Notes under the pieces: model-generated
The model's database searches: none
The model's input: only the letters and a program-made list of their open reading frames with translations
Told to the model about the DNA's origin: nothing
Program-made: the position numbers and the translations under genes
Shown here: piece by piece, positions 10,089 through 62,737 of the stretch
Numbering within the stretch: position 1 is the first letter of the stretch
Layout of the letters: each line of letters opens with the position of its first letter
Virus record (IMG/VR): IMGVR_UViG_3300036760_000522
Location: 1 to 64,000 of that record
Strand: one strand, 5' to 3'
DNA length: 64,000 nucleotides

Positions 10089-10134
10089 GGGATTTCAATA
10101 TTGGTGCCCTATCGTGTTTGGTATGAAAAGTCTA
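10089..10134 (+). ncRNA. candidate cas-regulating crRNA 2
   Basis: Spacer from 10100 (ATTGGTGCCCTAT) matches 2696-2708 except at positions 6 and 12. Confidence 0.55.
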
Positions 10135-23367: not shown

Positions 23368-24447
23368 GTGCGCTGGCAGCAATCTGGGTCCGCTTTCTAC
23401 CGGCCCTTGCTTGACACCGCGGTGCAGCACAATCTCACGTCCACGGGCAGCACCTGCATCGTGTATCGACCCACTGGTTAGATTGAACTTGCGACCAGTG
23501 TGTCGGTCGGGGTTGCGCTTTTCGTAGTAGTCCCGAACGGCTTTTTCCCCTACCCAAACGAGTCCTTCTTGCTGACAAACCTTTTTCTCGTCGTCGAGCT
23601 TGTCGAGAAAGCCTGACATCACGCCGGCTCGGAACTCACGCCTAAAGCGATTAGATCGCAGGCCCTCACCCTGCCTGTACTTGAACCACAACCGGTTCGC
23701 AGTGCGGTTGAGAAAAGTGTGCACGTAGGAGGCTAGCTCCAAGTTGTCGTCTAATCCACAGACCTCGAGAACGCGTCCTTGCTTACCTTCCGCAATGCGC
23801 CAGATGTAGATCCAGATACAGGCAACGAAGAAATGTCGTGACAAGATACAGCTGAGCAACTTGTCCGCTTCCGTGGTCCGTAAGCTTGGTTTGCCGAGAT
23901 GTCGAAAGCCGTAATGACTCGTCGTGACATCCAACACGTTTTCGATATTGTACTTCAGCATTAGCCGTTGCGCCGTTTTCATGGCTATCTCGGCCTCGTG
24001 TTGGTTGGCGCTCTTCGCTAGTGCTAAAAGACCGGCTATCTTTTGCAGGACAGCTGGACGCTCACCATTGCTCTTGGCTTGAGGCAATCCAGATGCTCGT
24101 CCGTCAAAGCCTCGCTCTTGACAGACCTTTTGGAACAAGTCTCCGTGAGGTAGCGCGTCGTCGGCTTTGAGGACTTCGTGAACGTACTGGTGCGCCATCT
24201 CGTGCTTCAAGACTTCGATGACAGCCCCCCACTCGGACGTGAACAAGAACCCGCGTGTGATTTCGACACACCGCGCACTCGGAACCCACCGACCCAAGGT
24301 CTTGGCGGCGTCGGTTAGTTGGAAAGCGCAGGCCTTCAACTGATTTGCGAAGAAATTGTGGTTGATCGATCGGTACTCGCGATACAAGGCGCGAACCGCG
24401 GCACTCTCTAGTTCGTTGGAGAGCTTCGCGTGTCCGGGGTTCAACAT
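23356..24447 (-). CDS. SprT-like metalloprotease + DUF2786 domain protein
   Basis: HEMAH zinc motif; KIAGLLALAKSANQHEAEIA...AQRLMLKYNI (DUF2786-like). Confidence 0.75.
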   Translation of the reverse strand: MLNPGHAKLSNELESAAVRALYREYRSINHNFFANQLKACAFQLTDAAKTLGRWVPSARCVEITRGFLFTSEWGAVIEVLKHEMAHQYVHEVLKADDALPHGDLFQKVCQERGFDGRASGLPQAKSNGERPAVLQKIAGLLALAKSANQHEAEIAMKTAQRLMLKYNIENVLDVTTSHYGFRHLGKPSLRTTEADKLLSCILSRHFFVACIWIYIWRIAEGKQGRVLEVCGLDDNLELASYVHTFLNRTANRLWFKYRQGEGLRSNRFRREFRAGVMSGFLDKLDDEKKVCQQEGLVWVGEKAVRDYYEKRNPDRHTGRKFNLTSGSIHDAGAARGREIVLHRGVKQGPVESGPRLLPAHSGD

Positions 24448-24540
24448 GATGTCCGTGGCTATTGCCGATTCCGGAAAGTTCGGCGCTTTGGTGGAAAGTG
24501 GAAACTAGTGTATAGAAGGCAAGCGGAGGAATCAAACGCG

Positions 24541-25752
24541 ATGTTGGAATGGTTGGTGTCGTTAACGGCGAATCCGGTATTTGGTGGTTTTCTTGGAGGG
24601 GCAGTTGTCGCTGGTGGCCTCTGGCTCCTACGCAACATTCCAGGTCAAGCAGCTAACTTCATACTTTGGCGGTTTGGAGCTTCGTTGATGGTCTTTAGCG
24701 AGGACGCGGCTTTCGAGCGTATGAACGAGTGGCTCAGCTCTCTTGAATACACCAAGAGGTGCCGCCGGCTGCGGCTCACGACAACCTACGACGAGGATAC
24801 CAGAACGGAGCAAGAAGTTGTAGCCCCAGGTATCGGCTCACATCTGTTTTGGTATCGAAACAGACCGATTCTCGTGAAGCGTTCCATCCCTGACAAGGGC
24901 GGACTCGGCAGCTGGAAGCGGTTCGAGGACATTGAAATCAAATCGTTTGGCTCGCCGAACCTGCTGAGGGATCTTGTACAAGACGTGAAGCTCGCGCGTC
25001 AGGAGCGGAACTCGAGAACCATCAACGTGTACCTTTATCGACACCGTTGGAGGCTGGCTGCGCGGAAACCGAAACGGGAACTCGACACAGTAATCTTGGA
25101 GGAGACAACCAAGAAATTGATTGTCTCGGATGCCGAATGGTTCATTGCGTCGCGGCGTCGTTATGACGAACTCGGACTGCCTTACCGTCGTGGTTACCTC
25201 TTTGAGGGCCCGCCAGGATGCGGTAAAACAACTCTTGCCATGGCGCTAGCCAGCCATTTGACGCGTCCGATTTACGCGCTCAATCTTGGCAGTGTCGTCA
25301 ACGACGACATGTTGATCGACGCTGTTTGCGAAGTGCCAGAGCATGCCATTCTCTTACTTGAAGACATCGACGCGACAGAAGCCAGCGTCATGCGACGGCC
25401 CGCAGAGGAGACCAAGGCACCTGTGCAACAACCGCCACCCGGAGCAATGTTTGTAGCTCGTCTGCGGAAACAGATAGAGGACAGCAAGGCTATCGCCGTT
25501 GTTTTAGCGTTCGAGTCCTGGCTTAGAAGCGCACCAATAGGCACACCACGAAGCGCTATACCGGATGATTTGTCTACAGATCCGTTGCGTGAGGAGGGAC
25601 TATTCGTCACTGTCGAAACGCCCAACAAATGTGAAGGCAGATTTGCCAAGATCCGACGTGACGAAAGTGGGAAACCCAGTCTCGACGAATGGGAGTATTT
25701 CACAGGAACCCACGGACGCTTCGTACGGCTACTCCCGCCCATTTGGCAGTGA
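24541..25752 (+). CDS. BCS1-like AAA ATPase, apparently truncated and fused to an unrelated C-terminal domain
   Basis: N-terminal TM segment, BCS1_N-like region, RRGYLFEGPPGCGKT, ILLLEDID; sequence leaves the AAA pattern after Walker B. Confidence 0.7.
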   Translation: MLEWLVSLTANPVFGGFLGGAVVAGGLWLLRNIPGQAANFILWRFGASLMVFSEDAAFERMNEWLSSLEYTKRCRRLRLTTTYDEDTRTEQEVVAPGIGSHLFWYRNRPILVKRSIPDKGGLGSWKRFEDIEIKSFGSPNLLRDLVQDVKLARQERNSRTINVYLYRHRWRLAARKPKRELDTVILEETTKKLIVSDAEWFIASRRRYDELGLPYRRGYLFEGPPGCGKTTLAMALASHLTRPIYALNLGSVVNDDMLIDAVCEVPEHAILLLEDIDATEASVMRRPAEETKAPVQQPPPGAMFVARLRKQIEDSKAIAVVLAFESWLRSAPIGTPRSAIPDDLSTDPLREEGLFVTVETPNKCEGRFAKIRRDESGKPSLDEWEYFTGTHGRFVRLLPPIWQ

Positions 25753-29707: not shown

Positions 29708-32700
29708 GTGGCACGGTTAAATTCAACAGCAATAGCGGGGTATTACCCGACTCCGGAACATCTAATTCCGAGGATTGCGAAACACCTTCGTGTGATTGAG
29801 TCCGATCAATGGTCGGGGGCGTGCGCTAGGTGGATGGATCCGTGCGCAGGTGATGGGGCTCTGATTTGTGATCTCGTTACTCGAGTGATGGATCAACCGG
29901 GCAAGGCAGGGCTCTACCTTTGTGAGCTTGAGAAGGAACGCGCTGAACGTTGCAAGGCCAAAGTCTATGAACTGTTCGGCTGGAAAGCTCAACAACAAGT
30001 TTTGCACGGGGACGCCTTTCACACGACTTTTGATGACGGTGACTGTGAAATCCTCTATCTGAATCCGCCGTATGATTTCGATCCGAAACACGTCCGTTTG
30101 GAGCAGAAGTTCCTTTCACGCTTCACGCAAGCGTTGCGACTCGACGGCGTGCTCGTCTTTGTTGTCCCGCATTATGCGCTTTCGGCTAGCGCTGAGCTTC
30201 TGGCCAAGGAGTACAAGGATCTCGTTTGTCTGAGATTTCCCGATCCTGACTACGCCACCTTCAAACAAGTTGTTGTGTTCGCCAGACGGTCGCGTCGTTT
30301 CGAACCGGATCCTGTGGTCGTTGCTCGCGTTCAAGCGTGGGCAGACTCAGTGGAGGGACTGCCCATTCTGGGGGAGACGTCGGCAGTCTACGAAGTCAAA
30401 GGGACGATGTACACAACAACGTGGAAGGTCCAAGAGTTGGATCTGCACGCTCTTGTCGCTAAGGCCCGCCCGTGGCACCAGACGACCCGTGAAGGGCTTC
30501 TTCCAGTTCCCCACACTCTGCCAACGACTCCCCCAGAGTCGCTCCTCTGGAGGCGTTACACGCTGGCTACTCCCCCTAGACCGGCGCACATCGCGAGCGG
30601 CCTCGCTACGGGTCTTTTCAACGGGCTTCGGATCAAGCCCGACACTGACACATCCGGGCTACCCGACCTCTTGGTCAAGGGGACTTTCGAACGAGAGTTC
30701 GTGCCTGTCGAGGATCGGCTTGACGCGGACGGCGTAATCATCGGCGCCGTGGAAGTTGAACGACCTCGGTTAAGTGTGACCTGCCTCAACCTGACAACGG
30801 GCACCTACCAGGAGTTGGGGACGCCTGGGAACCCTACGCTTGGTGACCTCTTGGCGAACTATCGCCAAAGCCTCATGGCTCAGATGCGACACCAATGCCC
30901 AGTCTTGTACGACCCGCAGGATCCCCCTGTTGTCACACTCAAGCCTGTCAGGCGGAAGCTGTACAAAGCTCAGGAGCACTCAGCCAAAGCGATCTTGAAA
31001 TTGCTTGAGCAACGCGAGACGAACCGATCAGCTATTTTGCTTGGCGAAATCGGCAGCGGCAAGTGTCTAGGTTTGGGCACCCTCGTGCTCAAATATGATG
31101 GGACACGCACACCTGTGGAGAGTATTCGTAAGGGGGATTTGTTGATGGGGCCCGACAGCAAGCCTCGCAAGGTTTTGAATACGACTAAAGGGACGGGTTC
31201 TCTTTACAAAGTTGTACCTGTTACTGGGGATTCTTGGATCTGCAATGACGCGCACATTCTGACTCTCGTACACACGATGAGTGATGAGATTTTTGACATA
31301 CCGTTAGCGCGTTATCGCAGTGGCCGCAGACTCAATTTGCGCTTGCGAAATGGACAGACTTCGCGAAGAACTACACATCCTGTTGAAGAGTTCAAGCAGT
31401 TCTTCCCGGAAAACGGAGTTGATTTTCCGGCTCAGGTAGTCACACCATTAGTTGATCCTTACTTTTTAGGTGTGTGGTATGGCGACGGGACTAAATTTAG
31501 TCTAAACGGGGTCAGTCGTTCTGTCGAAGTCACAACGGCGGACCAGGAGATCTTGTCGCTGTTGTCTACGATAGCCTCACAGTACAACTTGAAAGTCAGA
31601 GCCCGTAAAAATTCCAATCCCGACAATAAGGCGACCACTTACGCGCTCACTGTTGGGAACAGAGTCACAAAGAAGCCGTGGGCACACACGAGGGGTAACA
31701 GACCTAATCAACTTCTGCGACAGTTACAGGTATTGTACAAGGACGGGTTCCATCTGCCGCAAGAATATTTGACAGGCAGCCGTGAAGTGCGGAGAGCGTT
31801 TCTTGCGGGGCTGTTGGACTCAGACGGGTATCGGAACGGCCCTGGCGTTTTCGATTTCATTCAAAAGAAGCGAGAGTGGTCCGAAGACGTTTGCTTCTTA
31901 GCTCGTTCTCTAGGTATCAGGGCCACACTACGGAAGACAAGAAAATCCGCTTACCGTGGCGTTGCGGGTGACGTGTACTGGCGGGTCACCATGAGTGGGG
32001 ACTTTTCTGATTTGCCTTTACGTATTCCTCGTAAGCAAGGGCCAATGAGAGCTGCGGTGCGAAAGAATCGAGCCGGGGAGCCGAGTTACCGTCGCACGAA
32101 ACATGTAAGCCGCACGGGCATTCGTATTGGATCGATTGGCCTGGGTGAGTACGCAGGCTTCGAATTGAGTGGTGATGGACGGTTTTTACTAGGGGACTTC
32201 ACAGTCACACACAATACGAGCACGGTTTTAGCTGTCGCAAAAACGATCGCCAAAACTGTGTTCGTCATGTGTCCTCCGCACTTGCTCGACACGTGGAAGA
32301 ACGAGATCAAAGCGAACGTGCCGGAAGCACGTGTGCGTGTTTTGAAGACGATCGACAGTGTGAACCGTTTCGCTGAGGTCGTTGTTGAAAAGCCTCAGCT
32401 CACGATTGCGATCGTGTCGCGTGAGAGTGCCAAACTTGGCCACGGTTGGGAAGGTGTGGGCTCTGCATGTCCCAAGTGTGGCGCTGCAACGCCTGATACA
32501 GATTTAGCTCGGAAGCGCGCTCATTGCGAAGCTGTCGAAGTTCGTGCAGAGGACAGTCTCGCAAAGATGGCTGTTTCACTGGCTGCAACATTGTCTCGAT
32601 ACGCACCTAACCACTCAACGGTTCGAGCCTTGTTGAAGGGGCGTCATTGGTCACGGATTTTGACACATCGTGTAGCCAAAGCGAGTCCGCCTGCTTGGAG

Positions 32701-34519
32701 TGGTATTGAGCTGGAATCACTGACTGAGATTTTTGATCAGATTTTGATCAACCCCTCGGAGGACGGAATTCGTCTCTTTTTTAGGCTCTTGGCTGCGATC
32801 AAAAATCCAGCGGAGATCATACCGGATTTGGTGCGAAAGACTAAGGCGTGTATTGAAGCAAGCCCATATGCTTACCGCTTGGATTCTGTGGAGCGTGTGT
32901 TGGGGCTTTTCCTGCCACCAAACTCCGACCTTCAACGCTTTCTCGGTTTCAAGTTTTGGGATCACGATTTGGAGGCTATCGTGTCGACTGGTGTGTCGAC
33001 CGTTGGTGGTCGCCTTTGTTGGGCTGGGGGCACTCTCTTTTGTGATGACCGTCAAACAGGCTCTGTCGAGGCTGCCCTTGCGCTGCTTGACGAATTGATG
33101 TCTCAAGGCAAATTCACCATGTCCGATCCGTGTGGTGAGCCGTTGTTTGGTGCGTCAGCTCCGCGTCGTTATTCGTTGTCGAAGTATGTCGTCAGACATC
33201 ATCCGGATCTTTTCGATCTATTGATCCTAGACGAAGGGCACGAATACAGTAAAGCGGATACGGCCCAAGGATCGGCCGCACACAAGCTGATACAGCTTGG
33301 GATCCCGACCATTTTGATGACAGGGTCCCTCATGAACGGCTACGCACGAAGTCTGTTCATGAACCTGTGGAGTCTGTCGCCTGAGTTTCGACGCGAGTTC
33401 AATCGAAGCGACTTGCCACGGTTCGTGGATCGTTACGGTTACCGCAAGCGACTGATTGTCGAGGAGCAGGGGGAAGTTGTTGCCTACGGCTCTGTGTCGG
33501 ATCGTGTCGTGCGTGGAATCAAAATGCTCGGTGACGCACCAGGGGTCTTGCCGCTTCTCCTGTTCCGTCACCTCTTGCCGATCAGTGTGACGTTACACAA
33601 ATCGGACCTCGCTCTTGAGTTACCACGCTCAGAACTTCGACAGGTGCTCATTGATCCTGATCCTGCGACGAAGGCAAAGTACGACTTGTTGGTGCAAAGC
33701 CTCATGTCACAAATTAAAAAGGATCAGTTCGATGAGAAGCGCTCCGGGAAGCTCTTTGGTGCTCTAGCTGAGATCCCGAGCTACCTAGATCGCGCCACGT
33801 CGGACACAGGGAACACAGATTACGGGGACTACGAGATCCGATACCCTGCGAGCATTGGCGCTGAACTGGTTGCGTCAGCGCCAGCAATACCCGAGAGCGC
33901 CCGTCTCACCAAAGAAACTTGGCTGCTTGATACAGTTCAACAAGAACTCGACGAAGGGCGTCGAGTTCTTGTATTCTCGTGGCACACGTGCTTGTTACCG
34001 CGTCTTGCTCGGATCCTGTCCGAACACATCATGGAGCCCGTCCAGGTCCTTTACGCGGACAAGGTTCCGACCGGGAAACGTCAGCAGTGGATCGACACCA
34101 AGGTTGTCAAGAGGGACGTCCGCGTCATGGTCGCGAACCCGCTGACGGTACAAACAGGGCTCAACAATTTGGTACACTTCGCGACAGAGATCTGGCACGA
34201 GAACCCTGCGTGCAACCCGCTCATTTTCCGCCAGGCCATCGGTCGAGTGGATCGGATTAATCAGACCCTTGAGACCAGGATCCTGGTCCCTGTGTACCGA
34301 GGCACGATGCAAGAGACCGTCTACGATCTTTTGCTGCATAAGGTCGCCACGTCGACAGCCACCGATGGTGTGGACCCCTCAGCAGCGCTCATGGCGGTTG
34401 GTGGCGTCGAGGAAAACTATTCGGCGGGGCTCAGCCTCGGACGGGAGTTGTGGTCGGCGTGGACGCGGGGTGCCGGCGCGTCTCTAGTTCAAGCGCAGCG
34501 CGAAAAGCGGTCTGCTTGA
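29708..34519 (+). CDS. DNA methyltransferase-SF2/SNF2 helicase fusion containing an intein
   Basis: DPCAGDG (SAM motif I), NPPY (amino-MTase motif IV), GEIGSGK(T), DEGH, C-terminal QTGLN...QAIGRVDR. Confidence 0.85.
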   Translation: MARLNSTAIAGYYPTPEHLIPRIAKHLRVIESDQWSGACARWMDPCAGDGALICDLVTRVMDQPGKAGLYLCELEKERAERCKAKVYELFGWKAQQQVLHGDAFHTTFDDGDCEILYLNPPYDFDPKHVRLEQKFLSRFTQALRLDGVLVFVVPHYALSASAELLAKEYKDLVCLRFPDPDYATFKQVVVFARRSRRFEPDPVVVARVQAWADSVEGLPILGETSAVYEVKGTMYTTTWKVQELDLHALVAKARPWHQTTREGLLPVPHTLPTTPPESLLWRRYTLATPPRPAHIASGLATGLFNGLRIKPDTDTSGLPDLLVKGTFEREFVPVEDRLDADGVIIGAVEVERPRLSVTCLNLTTGTYQELGTPGNPTLGDLLANYRQSLMAQMRHQCPVLYDPQDPPVVTLKPVRRKLYKAQEHSAKAILKLLEQRETNRSAILLGEIGSGKCLGLGTLVLKYDGTRTPVESIRKGDLLMGPDSKPRKVLNTTKGTGSLYKVVPVTGDSWICNDAHILTLVHTMSDEIFDIPLARYRSGRRLNLRLRNGQTSRRTTHPVEEFKQFFPENGVDFPAQVVTPLVDPYFLGVWYGDGTKFSLNGVSRSVEVTTADQEILSLLSTIASQYNLKVRARKNSNPDNKATTYALTVGNRVTKKPWAHTRGNRPNQLLRQLQVLYKDGFHLPQEYLTGSREVRRAFLAGLLDSDGYRNGPGVFDFIQKKREWSEDVCFLARSLGIRATLRKTRKSAYRGVAGDVYWRVTMSGDFSDLPLRIPRKQGPMRAAVRKNRAGEPSYRRTKHVSRTGIRIGSIGLGEYAGFELSGDGRFLLGDFTVTHNTSTVLAVAKTIAKTVFVMCPPHLLDTWKNEIKANVPEARVRVLKTIDSVNRFAEVVVEKPQLTIAIVSRESAKLGHGWEGVGSACPKCGAATPDTDLARKRAHCEAVEVRAEDSLAKMAVSLAATLSRYAPNHSTVRALLKGRHWSRILTHRVAKASPPAWSGIELESLTEIFDQILINPSEDGIRLFFRLLAAIKNPAEIIPDLVRKTKACIEASPYAYRLDSVERVLGLFLPPNSDLQRFLGFKFWDHDLEAIVSTGVSTVGGRLCWAGGTLFCDDRQTGSVEAALALLDELMSQGKFTMSDPCGEPLFGASAPRRYSLSKYVVRHHPDLFDLLILDEGHEYSKADTAQGSAAHKLIQLGIPTILMTGSLMNGYARSLFMNLWSLSPEFRREFNRSDLPRFVDRYGYRKRLIVEEQGEVVAYGSVSDRVVRGIKMLGDAPGVLPLLLFRHLLPISVTLHKSDLALELPRSELRQVLIDPDPATKAKYDLLVQSLMSQIKKDQFDEKRSGKLFGALAEIPSYLDRATSDTGNTDYGDYEIRYPASIGAELVASAPAIPESARLTKETWLLDTVQQELDEGRRVLVFSWHTCLLPRLARILSEHIMEPVQVLYADKVPTGKRQQWIDTKVVKRDVRVMVANPLTVQTGLNNLVHFATEIWHENPACNPLIFRQAIGRVDRINQTLETRILVPVYRGTMQETVYDLLLHKVATSTATDGVDPSAALMAVGGVEENYSAGLSLGRELWSAWTRGAGASLVQAQREKRSA
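31064..32215 (+). mobile_element. intein (384 aa) with LAGLIDADG homing endonuclease
   Basis: Starts CLGLGT directly after Walker A Lys, ends VTHN, Thr+1; FLGVWYGDG and FLAGLLDSDG motifs. Confidence 0.92.
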
Positions 34520-38072: not shown

Positions 38073-39212
38073 ATGACAACACCGGCGAACATCCAGTGGG
38101 GATCCTACAAGGAATTTGAAGGTCCGTTCTTTCGCGGAACACAAAAGTTCAAACTTCCGGACAACCCAACTGAGAGCCAACGAGTCGTGGGCGTCATTAC
38201 TGCAACCGAAGGCGGTTCGTACGACGCAATGAACCTGTACGACAGATGTATCATCAGCACAGGTTTACTGCAATGGTGTGAGGCGAATTATTTCCTTACC
38301 AGTAGTTTGCTCGGAGCTATTCTTCAAAAACAATCCTCATTGATGTCACATCTTCAGCCCGCGTTAGACGCTAGTAATGCGACCTTCCGCTTGAAGTCAG
38401 GCGACAAGTGGAGGTTTTACATTGGCAAGACCGATCCGGAAGAAGTCGACACGTTGCCTGAGCAACAGCGACTGTTCTTGTTGAACAGCGATGGGCACCT
38501 CGGTACGTGGGACGATGCTTCCAAGCAACATGCGAAATTGTGGGCGTCGTGTGTGGCAAACTTGCTTGCAGAGCCTGCGGCTCAAGCCATCCAAATTGAC
38601 TACACAGCCGCGCGAGTGCGGATGTTTGCCAGCACACAGGCCAAAGAGATCCTATTCAACGACCCGACTCCTTCGGAGAGTTGGTGTGGGGCGATGCGAG
38701 CTGGTTACTTGAGCTTTGCGGCGAACCTTCCAGCGGTCGCCAGCCGACACTTGATCAAGGCTGTAAGTGCGACGACGGCTACGAAGTGGAGCCCTGACTG
38801 GTGTTGTGCAGTCTTCCGCGAACTGACGTTCGGCCCGGGGATCGCGATCTACCCTCACCGATACAAGGCTATTCGTCCGGTTGTGGAGCAGCTCTATTCG
38901 GTTGACTTGCCGGACATGGCAGAAGATCTCAAGAACTGGAAGTCCGGGTTAGCCCAGACTGCTGACCTGTCTGAGGGAGCTCCTGACTTTACGGAGCCTC
39001 GAGAGATCCAACGACTTCTCATCGCATTAAAGTACGACCTCGGTCCTTCTGGGGCGGATGGAGTCTTTGGTAAGAAATCCAGAGAGGCCCTCAGCACCTT
39101 TCAGCGACTCAACGGGCTCACAGCGGACGGTATGCCCGGCTCTAATACCAGAGTCAAGCTCATCGCGTCGTGGGGCAAACTGAGCGCGGAAGAACTCGCT
39201 GTCGGACTGTAA
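38073..39212 (+). CDS. putative endolysin: lysozyme-like N-domain + peptidoglycan-binding domain
   Basis: ATEGG..D....D...STGLLQW; C-terminal IQRLL...ADGVFGKKS..A...FQ..NGL.ADG (PG_binding_1-like). Confidence 0.75.
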   Translation: MTTPANIQWGSYKEFEGPFFRGTQKFKLPDNPTESQRVVGVITATEGGSYDAMNLYDRCIISTGLLQWCEANYFLTSSLLGAILQKQSSLMSHLQPALDASNATFRLKSGDKWRFYIGKTDPEEVDTLPEQQRLFLLNSDGHLGTWDDASKQHAKLWASCVANLLAEPAAQAIQIDYTAARVRMFASTQAKEILFNDPTPSESWCGAMRAGYLSFAANLPAVASRHLIKAVSATTATKWSPDWCCAVFRELTFGPGIAIYPHRYKAIRPVVEQLYSVDLPDMAEDLKNWKSGLAQTADLSEGAPDFTEPREIQRLLIALKYDLGPSGADGVFGKKSREALSTFQRLNGLTADGMPGSNTRVKLIASWGKLSAEELAVGL

Positions 39213-51043: not shown

Positions 51044-51068
51044 GCGGTTGGGGAAGGTCTGGTGCGTA

Positions 51069-51932
51069 GTGAAAGCCTTAGTGCTCAGTGGTGGAGGGTC
51101 GAAGGGGGCGTATGAGGTCGGAGCGATCTACCATCTGTGTGTAGTCGCTGCTCGAACCTATGACGTGATTTGTGGAGTTTCTGTAGGCGCTCTGAACGGC
51201 GCTTTTTTGGCCCAGTGGAAAGCTGGGGATGAAACCACAGGAGCTATGAAGCTCGACGACTTCTGGGCGACCATCAACCAGTCCAAAGTCTACAAGGCTT
51301 GGTTCGGTGGATACTTGGCGGCCCTGTGGAAACCGAGTCTTTACAATTCCAAGCCACTGCATGATTTGGTGCACAATAATTTGGACGCTGAGGCTGTTCG
51401 TCGCAGTGGTAAGCTCCTGCGTGTTGGAGCAGTTGACCTCAACACAGGTGAATATAGGCTGTTTGACGAACGACATCCAAAGCTTTGGGACGCAGTCCTA
51501 GCAAGCGCTGCCTATCCCGCGATTCTGTCTCCCGTAAAATTGGAATCGGGCCTTTGGATTGATGGAGGCGCGCGAGACATCACACCTCTTGGTGCTGCGA
51601 TACAACTAGGTGCAACAGATATCGACGTTGTCATGGCCTCTCCGTCGGCTGTGAAGCCTAGGAAAGCCCAAGGCATGAACGCGATCGACATTGCTTTTCG
51701 GGCTATCGACATTTTGACGGACGAGGTCAATCGAGGAGACCTGGCCAAGGCGCAGCTCTACAATCAACTGGTTGAGAGCGACCAACGCCCTGACAAGCGT
51801 TACGTGAAACTCACGGTCATCAGGCCGGATACCGAACTCACCAGCAATTCGTTTGACTTCTCTCCGAGCCTCCTCGCTTCGATGCGGAAGCGAGGTTACG
51901 AGGACGCAGATCGTGCCTTGTCCCGTGCTTGA
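51069..51932 (+). CDS. patatin-like phospholipase
   Basis: VLSGGGSKG, GVSVG (GxSxG), IDGG. Confidence 0.9.
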   Translation: MKALVLSGGGSKGAYEVGAIYHLCVVAARTYDVICGVSVGALNGAFLAQWKAGDETTGAMKLDDFWATINQSKVYKAWFGGYLAALWKPSLYNSKPLHDLVHNNLDAEAVRRSGKLLRVGAVDLNTGEYRLFDERHPKLWDAVLASAAYPAILSPVKLESGLWIDGGARDITPLGAAIQLGATDIDVVMASPSAVKPRKAQGMNAIDIAFRAIDILTDEVNRGDLAKAQLYNQLVESDQRPDKRYVKLTVIRPDTELTSNSFDFSPSLLASMRKRGYEDADRALSRA

Positions 51933-57117: not shown

Positions 57118-57885
57118 ATGTCAGGCGTCGCGTACTTTCGAGGGCAGCAGTTAGGGATCGACGACCTCGACCTATGCCTTGAAACGTCGTCAGGCCGACC
57201 TGTCAACGCGGCTGAGATTAGCTACGCTCTCTACGACTTCACGACTGGGCAAGAGGCTTTGCTCGGGATCCCACGACGGACACCGGTCAACGATGTCGTA
57301 GGACACTACTACGCCAGCCTCATCATTCCTCTCGACGCGAACATTGGTTGCTATCGGATCCGGTGGACCTTTCGTGAACTCATCGGCGGAGCCGTTAATC
57401 AAGTGGTCCAAGAGTTCAATGTCATCGACAAGGTGGCTCCTGAAACGACCATCTACACATGTTGTGAAGCCGAGTTGATTCGCAGCTTGCGGTACAGAAC
57501 CCGCGACCTGCGCCCGGATCGCAATTATCACTTCAGACCTCCGGCGCACGAAGAAACCATCCGACAGTTCAATCGTGTGTTTGGTTACATCTGGGAAGAT
57601 GATGAGCTACGAGAATTTTTGAGCCAGGCACTCGACATGGTGTCGGCTGCTCCGCCACGTACACCGATTCCGAACTGCGACATCTTGGCTAGAACCTATC
57701 CCGAATGGCGTTCACTCGTGGTGACAGGCGCCATGATGCATGCGATCTTTGCGTTGATGCTGAATTGGATTTCTGACGAATTCTCAGTTGTAGGGAGCAC
57801 ATTGGTTCGTGTTACGCTTCCGGATGGGCAGGTACTAGACTTGGCAATCAAAGAGCTGCACGACATTCTCCATGAGGATTTGTGA
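57118..57885 (+). CDS. putative head-tail connector/neck protein, N-part, ending in a 33-aa split-intein N fragment
   Basis: extein ends WISDEF; followed by SVVGSTLVRVTLPDG (intein block A-like) and a stop. Confidence 0.75.
   Translation: MSGVAYFRGQQLGIDDLDLCLETSSGRPVNAAEISYALYDFTTGQEALLGIPRRTPVNDVVGHYYASLIIPLDANIGCYRIRWTFRELIGGAVNQVVQEFNVIDKVAPETTIYTCCEAELIRSLRYRTRDLRPDRNYHFRPPAHEETIRQFNRVFGYIWEDDELREFLSQALDMVSAAPPRTPIPNCDILARTYPEWRSLVVTGAMMHAIFALMLNWISDEFSVVGSTLVRVTLPDGQVLDLAIKELHDILHEDL
57784..57885 (+). mobile_element. split intein N-fragment (Ser1, 33 aa)
   Basis: block A-like S-V-V-G-S-T-x-V...DG. Confidence 0.75.
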
Positions 57886-58850
57886 TGTCGTCTGGGTTGT
57901 CTAAACGGCAAGTGGCTCGTCAGTACGGACTCAATTTACACACAGTTGATATACTCTTGAAAAGAAATGTGCTGTCAATTCAAGCGGGTTGTTCACGACT
58001 TCGGCCCAAGCTTGTTGGTTTGGAAAAATTAGTTGAAGGAGAGCATTACATTGTGTGCTTGGAGTGTGGAGCATTCCAAGGAGCGATCATGTCCAAGCAT
58101 CTTCAAGCTTGTTCTGGGACCACGTACGCCGCCTACTTGTGTAGATATCCTGACACTCCTACGATGTCTGTTTTGACTGCTGCCAGCAAAGCCAAAACAG
58201 ACAGTCAGAAACGGTGTCAGTCCTTGACTTTGAAAGCGAGATTCAAGACAAAATCTGGTGATATTACCCGACGACAAATCTCAGAGGCGTCACGTCGATT
58301 ACATGATTCCGGATATCGTGAACGTGCCGCACGACACCTTCGTGTGTTGAATTCCCAACCAGAGCAGAGAGCAGCCCGGTCCGCAGAATCTAAGGCTAGG
58401 TGGGATTCAGGGGAGCAGGGATCTGTAAACAAGAGGTGGAGAACGAAGCATAGAGGTGAGATGCTTGCACTGGCTGCCAACGCACGTCGACATATTGGAC
58501 GGAAGCTAACCAAAATACACAAGGCTGCCAAAGACGCCATGCACGCCTCGGGACTTTCAGGGTTTGTCACTGAATACGAGGTGGGGTACTACTCTATAGA
58601 TGAGGCCCGTCCTGACCTCCGATTAGCCGTAGAGATTGACGGTTGTTACTGGCACGGTTGTCTTGTATGTGGTTTTTCCGGGATGGACAATACTCGGTCC
58701 TACGATAGACGTAAAACCACTTACCTGCGCAATCGCGGGTGGACCATTCTTCATCTTCGCGAGCACGAGATTAAGGACAATCTCAACGAGTGTGTGCGTC
58801 GTGTAGGTCGTATGGTTGAACAATTGTCTGCTAGAGAGGTTGCAGCATGA
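57885..58850 (+). CDS. free-standing Vsr/DUF559-like endonuclease with N-terminal HTH and zinc finger
   Basis: EY.VGYYSID...LAVEIDGCYWHG...YDRRK...LRNRGW.ILHL.E; CLECG...KHL. Confidence 0.8.
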   Translation: MSSGLSKRQVARQYGLNLHTVDILLKRNVLSIQAGCSRLRPKLVGLEKLVEGEHYIVCLECGAFQGAIMSKHLQACSGTTYAAYLCRYPDTPTMSVLTAASKAKTDSQKRCQSLTLKARFKTKSGDITRRQISEASRRLHDSGYRERAARHLRVLNSQPEQRAARSAESKARWDSGEQGSVNKRWRTKHRGEMLALAANARRHIGRKLTKIHKAAKDAMHASGLSGFVTEYEVGYYSIDEARPDLRLAVEIDGCYWHGCLVCGFSGMDNTRSYDRRKTTYLRNRGWTILHLREHEIKDNLNECVRRVGRMVEQLSAREVAA

Positions 58851-59479
58851 ACATTGAAACTCGGAAAGCGATACAAGATGCTTTCCGCATAGGTCAGCTT
58901 CGTGTTCAAACTGTGGAACCGTCAACTGGTCATGTAAATCTGTGTGTTGTATCTGACGTGTTGCGCCACGAAACGGCACATAAAGATAATGTACGTGTGG
59001 TACTCAATGACGGCCGGACAGTTACGTCAACGATCGATCATTCATTGTTCTCCAGACACGACAGCAAGATTTCCCCTATTCAAGCTGGGTCTCTCAAATC
59101 CGGAGATACTGTCGCTACAGTGTCTGGAGGATCTTTAGAATGGTCGGAGGTGGCCAATGTCGATCGACAACCACCTGAGAAACACACGTACGACTTGTCG
59201 GTTCCGGGCCCAGAGAACTTCGTACTTTCGAACGGTATCCTTGCACACAACTCGTACTCGATAGGGGGTGTCTCCCTCGATATTGAGAAGTCGAGCAAGT
59301 ACGAGTCTGCTTACCAGGCGATCAAGGATCAGTTCAACGAACAACTTGAAAAGGCCAAGGCGACAGTGAAGATCGTCAAGGGGCTACAGCAACCGAGATT
59401 CGGCATCGGGATCCGATCCAGCTTCGGTCCTATGGTTTCAGCTGGTGCCCTCACTCCTTCAAAATTTGTTGGATTTTAG
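58847..59479 (+). CDS. split intein C-fragment (135 aa) + C-extein of the neck protein
   Basis: TIDHSLF (block B), TYDLSVPGPENFV (F), AHN-S (G, Ser+1 at 59252); extein SYSIGGVSLDIEKSSKY. Confidence 0.85.
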   Translation: MNIETRKAIQDAFRIGQLRVQTVEPSTGHVNLCVVSDVLRHETAHKDNVRVVLNDGRTVTSTIDHSLFSRHDSKISPIQAGSLKSGDTVATVSGGSLEWSEVANVDRQPPEKHTYDLSVPGPENFVLSNGILAHNSYSIGGVSLDIEKSSKYESAYQAIKDQFNEQLEKAKATVKIVKGLQQPRFGIGIRSSFGPMVSAGALTPSKFVGF

Positions 59480-59499
59480 ATTCGGTGTTTCTTAAGCCT

Positions 59500-59808
59500 A
59501 TGTCTGAAGCAGTTGAAACCCAGAAACCCACCCAACTCACACCGAACGATCCTGTGGATCCAGAGCAGCTGGACCTATTTCGGCAGCTCGCCGAGTCACG
59601 TGCACGATTGTCAGACACTCTTTTGTCCCTGGAGCTGGAGAAGATCCAGATCCTCGGTGCAGCTCGCCAGATAGAGGCACAACAAGGCAAACTCATGGCG
59701 AGGTGCCTGACAGAGCGAGGACTGGCGCCTAATACTGCCGTGAGTATCGACCCGAAGACAGGCGTGTTGACTGTCATACAACAAGAACCTGAGATGCCCT
59801 CCAGTTGA
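59500..59808 (+). CDS. coiled-coil hypothetical protein
   Basis: ORF. Confidence 0.6.
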   Translation: MSEAVETQKPTQLTPNDPVDPEQLDLFRQLAESRARLSDTLLSLELEKIQILGAARQIEAQQGKLMARCLTERGLAPNTAVSIDPKTGVLTVIQQEPEMPSS

Positions 59809-59821
59809 GAGAGGCGCTACG

Positions 59822-60094
59822 TTGATCTATGTGGATCAGTTGATGAGCGGCACTGTAGATGGTTGTCGTGCAACGCAGTGGTGCCATCTCATTGCTGATA
59901 CCGACGAAGAGCTACACAGTTTTGCTAAACAGATAGGTATGAAACATGTGTGGTTCCAAGATGCGCCGCCGGCCAGTTTTCCCCATTACGATTTGACGGC
60001 ACGACGACGTACAGTCGCTGTCAGGCTGGGTGCCACAGAATTAGCGCGACGCGAATTCTCGGCTAAGATGAAGCAGATCCGTCAAACTTGGTGA
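59822..60094 (+). CDS. DUF4031 family protein
   Basis: MIYVD...WCHL.ADT.EELH.FA..IG...WFQ...HYDL. Confidence 0.8.
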   Translation: MIYVDQLMSGTVDGCRATQWCHLIADTDEELHSFAKQIGMKHVWFQDAPPASFPHYDLTARRRTVAVRLGATELARREFSAKMKQIRQTW

Positions 60095-60100
60095 TTTTCA

Positions 60101-62737
60101 ATGCCGTACGCTTCCCAACGAGATCGTGATCCCTCACTACTCGAACTTGAGGTTACGCCGTGGCCAGCCCCGCCACTCAATCTGTTTCTGACGAGCGGTT
60201 ACAAGCCTGGGGTTTTCGATCTTGTTTGGACGGATCCTTCTCAGCTGACACTGAATTCCAGATTCATTCTGGTCGGGGTCAACATTTATCGATCCTTCGA
60301 TTCTGAGTTTGGACCCTACGACCGTATCAACGAGTTCCCCATCGGTTCAACGTTCTGGCGAGACCAGACCGACAATGTCCTGATCTTGGACGAACCAGTT
60401 ACTGACGATCGTTGGCTTCTTCGAGGCCCTTGTACAGGCTCTGAGCTGGATGCTCCTAGGTATGTGTTCCGAACGCTTAGGTGCCCCCTGGTGCAGCCCG
60501 GGTCGCAAGCCCTACCAGCGAACATCCGGGACGTGGAAGTCCGCGTCAATGGCGTTGTGGCCCGTCTCAGTCGCGTCATTGGACCAACTGGTGAAATCGA
60601 GGTCGATCCAAATTCCTACCCCAACGTAGCTCTCCAAAAGCGGGACCCTGGGATCATTCCGGATCCTGGAACAACAGTCACAGTCTCCTACACCTACGAC
60701 AGATCGTTGCTTCGAACCGATCTCTTACAGCGGGTCTTTTACCGGGCGACGACCGTTGGCTATTTGGTTGACCTCAATTGTGCAACTGAGGTCACGCCAA
60801 TCCTACGTGAGACACCTCTAGAGCGTGCTGCGGTAACGAGCAGCGTCGAGGTCGAGAAGATTGATTGGATCTGGCGCGAGGCAGTTCGTCGCAATCGGTG
60901 GATTCTGGATCAAGGCGGCGAACGCGTCAAAGTGTTCATTCGGAAGCATGTGGGTGAGATTTGTGGTTGCACACAAACGACAACTCATAAACAACCGTTG
61001 AACGATTGTCATGTCTGTTTTGCACCGCAAACTTTGGTGCGCACTGATACCGGATACAAACCCATTAACACAGTAGCTGTGGGTGATCATGTTTTGTCTT
61101 CGAGCGGCCAGTATAGCCGTGTGACACGTGTGTTCGAAACCCCCTTTACAGGCGACTTGTTGGCAATCAGGTCCGCAGTTTCAACCAATGCGATTTTGAC
61201 TACTTTGAATCATCCTTTTTACACCTTGGTTGGACACCACGGTGTTGTCCAGTGCCGCCCGACGACTTGCCACATGATTTTGGACCGTGATAACGTTCTC
61301 TACAGTATTCAAGGACAAGGTACGGGGGTACGACAACTCCCTAGTGGGCGTTGGTGGGCGAGAGCTGGTGCTGGAACTAGAGGAAAACGTATAAGTTTGG
61401 GTACATTTTCTACTGAAGAGGAAGCCAAACAAGTTGTTCAATCCTATCGTCTGCGTCACAAGAAAGCCCACTCTTTGGAGTGGCTTCGAGCTGAGGATTT
61501 GGACGAGGATGATTGGCTTGTCGCACAATATCCGAGAACCGTCAGGGACTTGACCTATGTGGAGATCCCTCTATGTTTTCAAAAAACATCCCAATTTGGT
61601 CCAGATCGTCAAGGTGTTACACGATTTGATGTCGATGAAGAATTTCTGTGGGTTGTCGGATTGTACTTAGCTGAAGGATCTGCCGGTGGTCGCAGTATCA
61701 CCTTTGCTCTTCACGCGGATGAAGTAGACTACCAAAGTAGAGTCAAACGGTTTTTTGATCAACGTGGGTACACAGCCTCTATTAGAGTCGATAGTGGCGA
61801 CGGTCTAGGAGCCGTCGTGGTAGTCAACGGTTCACATTTATCAGAGTGGTTCCCTGTTTGGTTGGGTAGACACTGCGATAAAAAGCGGATACCAGAAGAG
61901 TTGATGTGTTTGCCTCCGAAAAAACAACAGTGGTTGCTTCAAGGGATCTACGATGGCGACGGATGGAAAAACGGTACTGAAGTAACACAGACTTCCGAAT
62001 TACTGGCTCTGCAATTGTCGGAGGTTCTACACCGCATTGGGAAACGGCCTTTAATACGACAACAACGTAGCAAGGCGTTGACACCTAAAGGCAATCCACG
62101 CAAATTGGCCTACTGTGTGAATTGGGAGGGTTCAGAGTTTACCAATGCCAGTCGAAAAGGTCGGTGGTCTTTCGAAGGACAGGAACTGTCTAGGATCAAG
62201 GGGATCACAAAAGTTCCATACGAAGGACCAGTATACAATTTGGAGGTCGAAGGGGATCACACGTATGTTGTGCAGGGTGTAGTGGTGCACAATTGTTACG
62301 GCACCTCAATAGTTGGTGGGTACGAAGGACCGTTCGATGTCGTCATGGCCCCCGACGACGCTGAACGAAAGCATTCACAACGTGACACGGGACGTACGAT
62401 CGAACATGGGTACGAGGTTTGGACGGGTCCTAGTCCACTCCTCAGTCAACGTGACTTTGTCGTCAAGATCACAGGGGACCGCTACAGCGTAGGTGCTGTC
62501 CGAATGCCGACGAATCGCGGCATGGTGCTCCAACAACACTTCATGTTGGGGCATTTGGACGAGAAAGACATCAGGTATCGTGTTCCGATCGATCTCTGCA
62601 ATCACGTGGTGTCTAGGTATGTAGACCGGTTGGTTCCTCCTCTCAACTCACCTGCACAAATAACGGACAAGTCAAACATACCTAGTGAGCGTCAGATTCG
62701 TGGCCGCACTATTACGTGGGAAAATATCGTCTGGTGA
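60101..62737 (+). CDS. putative head-closure/neck structural protein containing an intein
   Basis: FN3-like N-terminus, GGERVKVFIRK, C.C...CHV|CYG zinc cluster, C-terminal D.VV...G.RY.V. Confidence 0.65.
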   Translation: MPYASQRDRDPSLLELEVTPWPAPPLNLFLTSGYKPGVFDLVWTDPSQLTLNSRFILVGVNIYRSFDSEFGPYDRINEFPIGSTFWRDQTDNVLILDEPVTDDRWLLRGPCTGSELDAPRYVFRTLRCPLVQPGSQALPANIRDVEVRVNGVVARLSRVIGPTGEIEVDPNSYPNVALQKRDPGIIPDPGTTVTVSYTYDRSLLRTDLLQRVFYRATTVGYLVDLNCATEVTPILRETPLERAAVTSSVEVEKIDWIWREAVRRNRWILDQGGERVKVFIRKHVGEICGCTQTTTHKQPLNDCHVCFAPQTLVRTDTGYKPINTVAVGDHVLSSSGQYSRVTRVFETPFTGDLLAIRSAVSTNAILTTLNHPFYTLVGHHGVVQCRPTTCHMILDRDNVLYSIQGQGTGVRQLPSGRWWARAGAGTRGKRISLGTFSTEEEAKQVVQSYRLRHKKAHSLEWLRAEDLDEDDWLVAQYPRTVRDLTYVEIPLCFQKTSQFGPDRQGVTRFDVDEEFLWVVGLYLAEGSAGGRSITFALHADEVDYQSRVKRFFDQRGYTASIRVDSGDGLGAVVVVNGSHLSEWFPVWLGRHCDKKRIPEELMCLPPKKQQWLLQGIYDGDGWKNGTEVTQTSELLALQLSEVLHRIGKRPLIRQQRSKALTPKGNPRKLAYCVNWEGSEFTNASRKGRWSFEGQELSRIKGITKVPYEGPVYNLEVEGDHTYVVQGVVVHNCYGTSIVGGYEGPFDVVMAPDDAERKHSQRDTGRTIEHGYEVWTGPSPLLSQRDFVVKITGDRYSVGAVRMPTNRGMVLQQHFMLGHLDEKDIRYRVPIDLCNHVVSRYVDRLVPPLNSPAQITDKSNIPSERQIRGRTITWENIVW
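61016..62293 (+). mobile_element. intein (426 aa) with AP2-like domain and LAGLIDADG endonuclease
   Basis: CFAPQT start, TLNHPF, VHN-C end; GVRQLPSGRWWAR...ISLGTFSTEEEA; VGLYLAEGS and LQGIYDGDG. Confidence 0.9.

What the first reader, a model, noticed from the sequence alone, without database searches (positions are those of the whole stretch)
61016..62293. Intein carrying an AP2-like DNA-binding domain in addition to LAGLIDADG, inserted in a CxxC motif of a structural protein
Seen: GVRQLPSGRWWAR...KRISLGTFSTEEEAK (about 61319-61450) lies after block B and before the two LAGLIDADG motifs. The insertion splits C-H-V-C. Known: AP2 domains usually accompany HNH endonucleases rather than LAGLIDADG inteins. 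Inference: a chimeric homing module; splicing restores a metal site needed for head closure. With the split intein next door, two adjacent neck genes are intein-dependent.
Basis: partly seen in the sequence, partly recalled or inferred. Interest (0 to 1): 0.6.

Follow-up and report, generated by a model that had tools for sequence, protein, structure and literature searches.

The report
AP2-bearing LAGLIDADG intein in phage neck protein
A huge-phage neck protein is interrupted, inside a cysteine knuckle, by a mobile self-splicing intein whose homing endonuclease carries an extra AP2-type DNA-binding domain, a combination I did not find described and that is widespread in uncultured huge phages.

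Summary
ORF 60101-62737 (878 aa) holds a 426-aa class-1 intein at 61016-62293 (Cys1, TxxH, His-Asn, Cys+1). It has two intact LAGLIDADG motifs.

Between block B and the endonuclease lies a discrete domain at 61325-61459. A profile of this segment matches only AP2/ERF structures in the PDB (E 4e-7). AlphaFold gives strand-strand-strand-helix at pLDDT above 90, and AtERF1 is the top structural match in two independent searches.

The host protein is not annotated. Its C-terminal half has the phage neck "stopper" (head-completion) fold (Z up to 10.7). In an isolated jumbo phage its homologue lies between the head-tail connector and the tail terminator.

The intein sits before the last Cys of four invariant cysteines. 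A 93%-identical phage contig and a soil contig lack exactly these 1278 bases. At least 119 relatives (40-68% identical) occupy the same site; 115 keep the AP2 domain.

The neighbouring connector gene is indeed split by a split intein with a free-standing endonuclease gene between the halves.

Most likely the AP2 domain is an accessory DNA-recognition module, like the PI-SceI recognition region. This is a new variant of a known kind. Function is inferred, not shown.

The parts
60101..62737 (+). Precursor ORF, 878 aa: neck (stopper-fold) protein interrupted by the intein
   Evidence: The start is supported by the conserved MPYAS... N-terminus of homologues.
60101..61015 (+). N-extein (aa 1-305). 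It ends in C288-x-C290 ... C303-H-V.
   Evidence: 821 homologues were found; the 120 listed are intein-free proteins of about 450 aa. The cysteines are invariant in 47 intein-free homologues.
61016..62293 (+). Intein, 426 aa, class 1: Cys1 (61016-61018), block B T368/H371, block F D719/H720, His730-Asn731
   Evidence: This stretch is cleanly absent from L081 and from a contig of run X4.
61238..61270 (+). Invariant H380, C385 and C390 just upstream of the AP2 insert. The invariant H457 (61469-61471) lies just downstream. Together they may form a small metal staple at the base of the insert.
   Evidence: Invariant columns of alignments A1 and A2. Metal binding was not tested.
61325..61459 (+). 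AP2-type DNA-binding domain (three strands plus a helix) inserted in the N-terminal lobe of the Hint domain
   Evidence: Pfam AP2 1.1e-4 and 1.5e-6 in the genome scan. The profile hits only AP2/ERF in the PDB. AF2 pLDDT is above 90. 1gcc matches with rmsd 1.5 A over 47 columns; 2gcc gives Z 6.5 and ranks first of 48,161 chains. Phage HNH-AP2 proteins match in BFVD.
61598..62095 (+). Double-motif LAGLIDADG endonuclease domain. Motif 1 is 61646-61681 (catalytic E525), motif 2 is 61934-61966 (catalytic D620).
   Evidence: Pfam LAGLIDADG_3 at its cut-off, matched by 24 of 33 relatives. E525 is at least 90% conserved and D620 is invariant.
62228..62293 (+). C-terminal Hint blocks F and G (VYNLEVEGDHTYVV...VVHN)
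62294..62737 (+). C-extein, starting with Cys+1 (C-Y-G-T-S-I-V-G-G-Y-E-G-P), up to the stop codon
   Evidence: It is part of the stopper-fold domain.
57118..57885 (+). N-terminal half of a head-tail connector gene. It ends in a short N-intein of about 33 aa (from nt 57784, SVVGSTLVRV...).
   Evidence: Residues 6-222 align to residues 4-230 of Tunturi_5 gp319, annotated 'head-tail connector protein'.
57882..58850 (+). Free-standing DUF559/Vsr-like endonuclease gene between the two halves of the split gene
   Evidence: Pfam DUF559 6.1e-6. PHROG homing endonuclease / endonuclease families, about 1e-6.
58847..59479 (+). C-terminal half of the connector gene: C-intein aa 1-135 (holds block B TIDH, ends ...AHN at nt 59251), then Ser+1 and the C-extein
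   Evidence: Intein_splicing 5.7e-13. Residues 137-188 align to gp319 residues 232-283.

Best explanation
This is a mobile, bifunctional class-1 intein. Its Hint splicing domain hosts two modules. One is a double-motif LAGLIDADG homing endonuclease in the usual place. The other is an AP2-type DNA-binding domain inserted in the N-terminal Hint lobe, between block B and the strands that lead to the endonuclease. PI-SceI carries its DNA recognition region in the same kind of position. The intein sits before the last cysteine of a C-x-C...C-x-x-C-x-G-T-G knuckle in the stopper (head-completion) protein of a 301.5-kb tailed phage. After translation the Hint domain splices itself out, using Cys1, TxxH, His-Asn and Cys+1, and joins the two halves of the neck protein. 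The released intein is proposed to cut intein-free alleles of the same gene in co-infecting phages. In this model the LAGLIDADG core cleaves at the insertion site and the AP2 domain supplies extra contacts on flanking DNA, so that repair copies the intein in. Shown here: the domain make-up, the fold, the exact insertion or deletion between near-identical genomes, the spread at one site, and the conservation of all modules. Inferred: splicing activity, endonuclease activity, DNA binding by the AP2 domain, and metal binding by the knuckle.
For: Architecture. AP2 identity: the family profile hits only AP2/ERF chains, best 4.1e-7. The AF2 model gives b-b-b-a with blocks at pLDDT 88-96. The nine best Foldseek PDB hits are all AP2/ERF; 1gcc has prob 1.0 and rmsd 1.5 A. 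A Foldseek-independent scan of 48,161 chains ranks AtERF1 first, Z 6.5, 51 residues aligned. Most named BFVD hits are phage HNH endonucleases or AP2/ERF proteins, and PHROG HNH-endonuclease families match aa 409-457. Selection on the module: 115 of 119 relatives keep it. Its mean pairwise identity is 0.55, equal to LAGLIDADG (0.56) and Hint (0.55) and above the extein (0.445). The catalytic E525 and D620 and the splicing residues are conserved. Mobility: a 93%-identical contig (L081) with the same gene order lacks exactly 61016-62293. A soil contig of run X4 bridges 61009 to 62291, while runs X2 and X3 hold pieces of the intein itself at full identity. The 120 listed host homologues are all intein-free, against more than 200 intein-bearing proteins. 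103 of 119 relatives sit at the same profile position of the same host family. The intein is more conserved than its host and only weakly correlated with it (Spearman 0.39). [quoted passage not shown]
Against: No experiment shows splicing, cleavage or DNA binding. The Pfam AP2 score (22.8 bits) is below the curated cut-off (33.3), and only 7 of 33 relatives reach E<=0.01 singly. By my recollection of the AtERF1-DNA complex, only about two of its seven base-contacting residues are kept, so a GCC box is unlikely to be the target, and DNA binding itself rests on homology alone. A whole-intein model was not made (fold cap), so the position of AP2 relative to the LAGLIDADG DNA-binding surface is unknown. 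Four natural relatives lack AP2 yet keep open frames, so the module is not indispensable to the intein as such. The presence/absence polymorphism could also come from precise loss rather than gain.
Confidence: 0.7

Rival explanations
1. The AP2 domain, together with the C(-3)-x-x-Cys1 knuckle, makes splicing conditional. Zinc or a disulfide on Cys1, or DNA bound by AP2, would hold the precursor until the right moment of virion assembly. On this reading the intein is a maturation switch for the neck protein rather than only a parasite.
For: In the precursor the intein's Cys1 sits where the fourth invariant cysteine of the knuckle belongs, three residues after C303. A disulfide between an N-extein cysteine and Cys1 blocks splicing of the P. 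abyssi MoaA intein, zinc inhibits several inteins, and ssDNA triggers splicing of the RadA intein (PMC10663303). The host is a protein that closes the DNA-filled head. A second neck gene nearby also depends on an intein.
Against: There is no data on splicing conditions. The listed host homologues manage without any intein. The C-x-x-C context is what any Cys1/Cys+1 intein at a metal-ligand cysteine would show. Intact LAGLIDADG catalytic residues and the presence/absence polymorphism point to ordinary selfish mobility.
Confidence: 0.12
2. The AP2 segment is a passenger. It would be a relic of an HNH-AP2 homing endonuclease gene that once nested in the intein and lost its nuclease, and it now has no role.
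For: The nearest AP2 relatives are those of phage HNH endonucleases. Four relatives have lost the segment cleanly. A distantly related intein at the same site has a cysteine-rich loop there and no AP2.
Against: It is retained in 115 of 119 relatives that have diverged to 40% identity. It is as conserved as the catalytic domains. Residues are invariant in the strands (W, R, G-T). No trace of an HNH motif lies next to it.
Confidence: 0.1
3. The segment is not an AP2 domain at all but a Hint-domain loop with a chance resemblance.
For: The Pfam score is below the curated cut-off. Foldseek E-values are modest (0.018). Z 6.5 lies in a range where common arrangements occur.
Against: All five profile hits in the PDB are AP2/ERF and nothing else matched. 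AP2 chains rank first in three independent structure searches, at 33-36% identity. The L-G-T-F and E-E-A signature is conserved across the family.
Confidence: 0.03

Closest known systems
PI-SceI (S. cerevisiae VMA1 intein) and its DNA recognition region; more generally the 'accessory domains' of homing-endonuclease inteins (PI-PfuI, PI-TkoII, Tli/Pho VMA; PMC8966425)
   Same: A class-1 intein with a nested double-motif LAGLIDADG endonuclease plus a third module. [quoted passage not shown] The presumed role is extra DNA contacts that set affinity and specificity.
   Different: The third module here has the AP2/ERF fold, which the paper on accessory domains does not mention (0 occurrences). The host is a phage virion protein rather than an ATPase or polymerase. 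No detectable sequence relation to PI-SceI was found.
HNH-AP2 homing endonucleases of phages, cyanobacteria and ciliates (Magnani et al. 2004, as cited in PMC10448857; the IPA-HNH genes of phage ICP1)
   Same: An AP2 domain serves as the DNA-binding module of a homing endonuclease. These are the closest structural and sequence relatives of the segment.
   Different: There the nuclease is HNH and the genes are free-standing. Here the nuclease is LAGLIDADG and the whole unit is an intein, with AP2 embedded inside the splicing domain rather than at a terminus.
Inteins trapped through an N-extein cysteine or metal (P. abyssi MoaA redox trap; zinc-inhibited DnaB and Prp8 inteins; PMC10663303)
   Same: A cysteine at position -3 and the catalytic Cys1 form a C-x-x-C pair at the N-terminal splice junction.
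   Different: Here the pair belongs to a four-cysteine knuckle that is invariant in the host family. Whether it regulates splicing is untested.
Fractured genes: split inteins with a free-standing endonuclease gene between the halves (Dassa et al. 2009, cited in PMC10448857)
   Same: The neighbouring connector gene (57118-59479) has exactly this layout, with a DUF559/Vsr-like endonuclease ORF between the halves.
   Different: The split lies early in the intein. The N-piece is about 33 aa and block B lies in the C-piece, as in the atypically split inteins I recall from metagenomic phage genes. This concerns the neighbouring gene, not the AP2 intein.
Phage neck stopper / head-completion proteins (SPP1 gp16, phage 812 stopper, T1 stopper, lambda gpFII, T4 neck)
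   Same: The fold of residues ~250-405 of the intein-free homologue matches: Z 10.7 to 6.8 across 33 neck entries. The gene sits between connector and tail terminator in Tunturi_5.
   Different: The protein is about 450 aa, against about 110-270 aa. It has a large N-terminal beta-rich extension and a four-cysteine knuckle. It has no Pfam or PHROG family.

Membership tests
Intein (class 1, Hint splicing domain) | N-terminal Cys/Ser, block B TxxH, block F, C-terminal His-Asn, and Cys/Ser/Thr at +1 | tested here: met
   C306, T368/H371, D719/H720, H730-N731 and C732 are present and conserved in 33 relatives. Pfam Intein_splicing, Hint_2 and PT-HINT give E 3e-7 to 8e-6, each just under its own cut-off.
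Intein (class 1, Hint splicing domain) | In-frame insertion absent from orthologues, at a conserved site | tested here: met
   L081 and a contig of run X4 lack exactly nt 61016-62293. The 120 listed homologues are intein-free.
Intein (class 1, Hint splicing domain) | Protein splicing activity | not testable with these tools
   Needs expression of the precursor.
LAGLIDADG homing endonuclease (double-motif) | Two LAGLIDADG motifs about 100 residues apart, each ending in a catalytic acidic residue | tested here: met
   LYLAEGS (E525) and IYDGDGW (D620) lie 95 residues apart. LAGLIDADG_3 scores 22.6 bits against a cut-off of 22.5. 24 of 33 relatives match, best 4e-8.
LAGLIDADG homing endonuclease (double-motif) | Site-specific cleavage of the intein-free allele | not testable with these tools
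   Needs an in vitro cleavage assay.
AP2/ERF DNA-binding domain (PF00847) | Score over Pfam's curated cut-off | tested here: not met
   22.8 bits and 27.3 bits, against 33.3. So I do not file it as a Pfam-level member on the single sequence alone.
AP2/ERF DNA-binding domain (PF00847) | Profile-level homology to solved AP2 domains | tested here: met
   A profile of 11 sequences hits only WRI1, TEM1, ERF096 and AtERF1, E 4e-7 to 2e-3.
AP2/ERF DNA-binding domain (PF00847) | Three-stranded antiparallel sheet packed on one helix | tested here: met
   AF2 gives strands 28-30, 36-42 and 47-54 and helix 57-71. 1gcc: rmsd 1.5 A over 47 columns. 2gcc: Z 6.5, rank 1 of 48,161.
AP2/ERF DNA-binding domain (PF00847) | Sequence-specific DNA binding through Arg/Trp of the sheet | not testable with these tools
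   The residues invariant in A2 include W36 and R39, and R48 is nearly invariant. By my recollection of the AtERF1 complex, most GCC-box contacts are not kept.
Phage neck stopper / head-completion protein | gp16/gpFII-like beta-barrel fold | tested here: met
   In the model of homologue P0003 (pLDDT 69), residues ~250-405 match phage 812, T1, Pam3, SPP1, lambda, T4 and phiKZ neck chains, Z 10.7 to 6.8.
Phage neck stopper / head-completion protein | Gene lies in the neck/tail module | tested here: met
   In Tunturi_5, gp322 lies between the head-tail connector gp319 and the tail terminator gp324 and sheath gp326. In the window it lies 600 bases downstream of the split connector gene.
Phage neck stopper / head-completion protein | Presence in the virion at the portal-tail junction | not testable with these tools
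   The phage is uncultured.
Split intein / fractured gene (neighbouring gene) | Two ORFs that together match one contiguous homologue, with intein pieces at the break and an endonuclease ORF between | tested here: met

The most novel reading that the evidence does not exclude
The intein is more than a parasite. In the precursor its catalytic Cys1 completes the host's four-cysteine knuckle, and a DNA-binding AP2 domain is built into the splicing domain. Maturation of the head-closing stopper protein could therefore be gated by zinc, by redox state or by DNA. Together with the split-intein connector gene nearby, that would give a splicing-controlled checkpoint in neck assembly of huge phages.
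Probability: 0.1. Interest if true: 0.75.

Novelty: new variant of a known kind. Interest (0 to 1): 0.5.

Why it matters
Homing inteins are known to carry structurally diverse accessory domains that tune DNA recognition, and acquiring such domains has been proposed as a way for them to escape extinction (PMC8966425). Here the accessory domain is an AP2 domain, so far tied to HNH homing endonucleases and, through them, to the origin of plant and apicomplexan AP2 transcription factors.

This shows that the AP2 module has been recruited by a second, unrelated nuclease class, and embedded inside a splicing domain. The family is large and natural variants without AP2 exist. A related AP2-less copy sits in the Cys-x-x-Cys of a primase zinc ribbon. 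That gives a ready-made comparative system for asking what an accessory domain does for target choice.

The family could also supply compact, long-site meganuclease scaffolds. It annotates a widespread, previously nameless huge-phage protein as a neck stopper. It shows that two neck genes of one phage depend on protein splicing.

Tried and rejected
- Locus search in IMG/VR with the single intein found no relative. It worked only with alignment A1.
- Pfam and PHROGs gave nothing for the exteins. The ESM Atlas gave only unnamed viral clusters and holds no model.
- The deposited phage collection has no close relative of the intein (best 25% identity). The three full-length distant hits have no AP2 at that position.
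- A GGCGGC (GCC-box) motif lies about 100 bases upstream of the insertion site. I rejected it as an AP2 target because it is too far for a domain tethered to the endonuclease, and it simply encodes the invariant Q-G-G-E-R.
- Magnani et al. 2004 is not held in the library.
- The big representative search was not run. A profile from this family would fill the 150 listed rows with the family itself, so it would not answer whether other intein families carry AP2.
- A whole-intein fold was not possible (two-fold cap, spent on the AP2 segment and on the extein homologue).
- Complex prediction was not used, as no protein-protein binding is claimed.
- Joined extein: a script printed the joined extein once, to read the junction. 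It was not saved, searched or folded. Searches used the N- and C-exteins separately by reference, and the fold used the natural intein-free homologue P0003.
Full report
**1. What is in the sequence**

The window is the first 64 kb of a 301,550-bp virus record with direct terminal repeats. ORF 60101-62737 (+) encodes 878 aa.

Residues 306-731 (nt 61016-62293) carry every hallmark of a class-1 intein:
- Cys1 (CFAPQT...)
- block B T-L-N-H
- block F ...EGDHTYVV
- terminal His-Asn
- Cys at +1

The finding's coordinates are exact. The host reads ...N-D-C-H-V | intein | C-Y-G-T-S..., so the insertion does split C-H-V-C.

Pfam on the single protein gives:
- Intein_splicing 2.6e-7
- Hint_2 3.8e-6
- LAGLIDADG_3 1.3e-4, at its cut-off
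- AP2 1.1e-4, at 22.8 bits and below the cut-off of 33.3

**2. Is the segment an AP2 domain?**

I cut the segment (aa 383-465) from the window and from ten IMG/VR loci that carry a related intein. All were taken by DNA reference and aligned as A2.

- Sequence profile. A profile of A2 searched against all PDB sequences at E<=10 returned five sequences. All five are AP2/ERF domains: WRI1 4.1e-7, TEM1 4.7e-5, ERF096 4.9e-4, AtERF1 1.6e-3 twice.
- Predicted fold. AlphaFold2 on A2 gives strand 28-30, strand 36-42, strand 47-54 and helix 57-71. The ten-residue blocks over this region have mean pLDDT 94, 74, 96 and 88. The flanks are poorly predicted.
- Foldseek against the PDB. All of the nine best hits are AP2/ERF. 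1gcc has probability 1.00, rmsd 1.5 A over 47 columns and 36% identity.
- Foldseek-independent scan of 48,161 representative chains. AtERF1 ranks first (Z 6.5, 51 residues, 33% identity). Apicomplexan and plant AP2 proteins follow.
- Library of viral protein models. The best 50 hits have probability 0.96-1.00. Most of the named ones are phage HNH endonucleases or AP2/ERF-domain proteins. The targets are 52-377 aa long.
- PHROG families of HNH endonucleases match aa 409-457.

The stated refutation test ('segment does not fold as AP2') is therefore failed. The segment is an AP2-fold domain, closest to those of phage HNH homing endonucleases.

The Pfam curated cut-off is not reached. I therefore call it a divergent AP2 domain on profile and fold evidence, not a Pfam-threshold member.

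**3. Position and modularity**

The domain lies after block B and before the strands (H-x-L-E-W...D-W-L-V) that return to the Hint fold and lead to the endonuclease. [quoted passage not shown]

Four residues invariant in 33 relatives bracket it: H380, C385 and C390 upstream, and H457 downstream. They may form a small metal staple; this was not tested.

Of 119 relatives, 115 keep the domain. Four lack exactly this stretch (P0223, P0237, P0239, P0241).

A second, only 22%-identical intein occupies the same host site in L011, L012 and L016. It has a cysteine-rich loop there and no AP2. Distant inteins in deposited phages have nothing there.

Mean pairwise identity among 33 relatives:

| Part | Mean pairwise identity |
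|---|---|
| AP2 | 0.55 |
| LAGLIDADG | 0.56 |
| Hint | 0.55 |
| Extein | 0.445 |

The module is therefore kept as carefully as the catalytic parts. The catalytic E525 and D620 of the two LAGLIDADG motifs are conserved.

**4. The host protein**

The exteins match no Pfam or PHROG family. The N-extein, searched by reference, finds 821 homologues. The 120 listed are intein-free proteins of about 450 aa, on contigs up to 620 kb. In IMG/VR there are 238 relatives, on viral contigs up to 529 kb. This is a core protein of uncultured huge phages.

Instead I folded the natural intein-free homologue P0003 (75% identical) with 46 relatives (mean pLDDT 69).

Residues ~250-405 match phage neck stopper / head-completion proteins:
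- phage 812: Z 10.7 and 9.9
- T1 stopper: Z 9.2
- cyanophage Pam3: Z 9.2
- GTA, phiKZ, T4, lambda, SPP1 gp16 and PBSX XkdH
- in all, 33 consecutive neck entries down to Z 6.3

In the isolated 309-kb phage Tunturi_5, the homologue is gp322, deposited as 'minor tail protein'. It lies between the head-tail connector gp319 and the tail terminator gp324 and sheath gp326. 'Structural, neck' is therefore supported at the level of fold and synteny.

Four cysteines (C-x-C-x12-C-x-x-C, followed by [YF]-G-T-G) are invariant in 47 intein-free homologues. The intein sits before the fourth. A metal knuckle is a reasonable inference, but it was not tested.

In the precursor the intein's Cys1 stands where the fourth cysteine belongs, so C(-3)-x-x-Cys1 keeps the spacing. 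This is the geometry of the known MoaA disulfide trap, and zinc is a known splicing inhibitor (PMC10663303).

**5. Mobility**

- Contig L081, from another sample, has the same gene order and is 93% identical in DNA across the aligned 57126-61009. It lacks exactly nt 61016-62293.
- Contigs of a soil run (X4) bridge 61009 to 62291. Two sediment runs (X2, X3) hold pieces of the intein itself at full identity.
- In the two codons before the site, five of six bases differ (CATGTC against GAAAAT). The surrounding extein DNA is 92-94% identical.
- Across the family, position -2 is His or Pro in 79% of intein-bearing alleles. It is Leu in 40% of intein-free ones, against His or Pro in 15%. This comparison is not controlled for phylogeny. 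It fits co-conversion of flanks, resistance of empty alleles, or a splicing preference.
- 103 of 119 intein-bearing proteins match the stopper-family profile, with the insertion at the same profile position. Their hosts have diverged to barely detectable similarity.
- One AP2-less relative sits in the C-x-x-C of a DnaG-type primase zinc ribbon (P0241).

**6. The neighbour**

ORF 57118-57885 aligns to residues 4-230 of Tunturi_5 gp319 ('head-tail connector protein'). ORF 58847-59479 (residues 137-188) aligns to gp319 residues 232-283.

- The first ORF ends in about 33 aa that look like intein block A.
- The second ORF starts with 135 aa holding blocks B, F and G, and ends ...AHN | S.
- Between them lies a DUF559/Vsr-like endonuclease gene.

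This is the 'fractured gene' layout. Two neck genes therefore depend on inteins. They are separated by two small ORFs, one of them DUF4031.

**7. Mechanism and comparison**

The best-supported reading is a selfish homing intein whose LAGLIDADG endonuclease has gained an AP2 accessory DNA-recognition domain. Accessory domains of homing inteins are known, structurally diverse, and shown to modulate cleavage. The PI-SceI DNA recognition region is likewise an insertion in the Hint domain (PMC8966425). That paper does not mention AP2.

No held paper contains both 'inteins' and 'APETALA2'. The papers that hold both 'AP2 domain' and 'intein' were checked in part: two were read at those terms, and they describe AP2 with HNH endonucleases. 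Absence from this library is not proof of absence from the literature.

I rate the finding a new variant of a known kind: intein plus LAGLIDADG plus accessory domain, with an AP2 fold as the accessory and a virion neck protein as the host.

**8. Limits**

- All function is inferred.
- The spatial relation of AP2 to the endonuclease was not modelled.
- Whether other intein families carry AP2 was not surveyed.
- The extein model is of middling confidence (pTM 0.35) outside the matched domain.

Noticed in passing
window 57118-59479: The head-tail connector gene is fractured by a split intein with an unusually short N-piece (about 33 aa, starting with Ser) and a 135-aa C-piece that holds block B. 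A DUF559/Vsr-like endonuclease ORF (57882-58850) overlaps both halves by 4 bases. The near-identical contig L081 has the same layout.
   Followed up: partly
window 2668-10870: The phage encodes a type I-C-like CRISPR-Cas set: Cas5d (2668-3333), Cas8c/Csd1 (3330-5024), Cas7 (5058-5945) and a helicase (5964-8345). An array of about 30 repeats with spacing near 72 nt follows (8524-10870). The later repeats vary in the hairpin stem, with both arms changed together, but keep the ...CTGATGATTTCAAC end.
   Followed up: partly
window 29708-34519: A 1603-aa ORF with a DUF6094 methyltransferase-like N-terminus carries another LAGLIDADG intein (Hom_end, LAGLIDADG_3, Hom_end_hint; about 31.4-32.0 kb). No AP2 match was found in it.
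   Followed up: no
G000:C1 79443-79706 and 145728-146873 (outside the window): There are two further intein matches in the same phage genome. One, in a 921-aa frame, has a LAGLIDADG domain. In all, the genome shows at least five intein-bearing genes.
   Followed up: no
L011 3844-5040, L012, L016 724-1881: A different intein (22% identical) sits at the very same C-x-x-|C site of the stopper protein in other huge phages. It has a cysteine-rich loop where the AP2 domain sits here. Two intein lineages therefore compete for one site.
   Followed up: partly
protein P0241: A 40%-identical relative of the intein, without AP2, is inserted before the second Cys of a C-x-x-C in a DnaG-type primase zinc ribbon. 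This is a possible jump to an ectopic cysteine-knuckle site.
   Followed up: partly
window 61010-61015 against L081 6823-6828: Five of the six bases just upstream of the insertion site differ between the intein-bearing and intein-free alleles (His-Val against Glu-Asn), within 92-94% identical extein DNA. Family-wide, His or Pro at -2 goes with the presence of the intein.
   Followed up: partly
window 61238-61270 and 61469-61471: The invariant H380, C385, C390 and H457 flank the AP2 insert. The C-G-P-K-C element is kept even in three of the four relatives that lack AP2. It may be a zinc staple at the insertion point.
   Followed up: no
window 24430-25752, 51048-51932, 38073-39212: Other genes in the window: a BCS1-like AAA ATPase, a patatin-like phospholipase next to large structural ORFs, and a protein with a peptidoglycan-binding domain.
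   Followed up: no
L083 (PP885688.1 265599-266870): Tunturi_5 gp322 is deposited as 'minor tail protein', but by fold and position its family looks like a neck stopper / head-completion protein. The annotation could be refined.
   Followed up: partly
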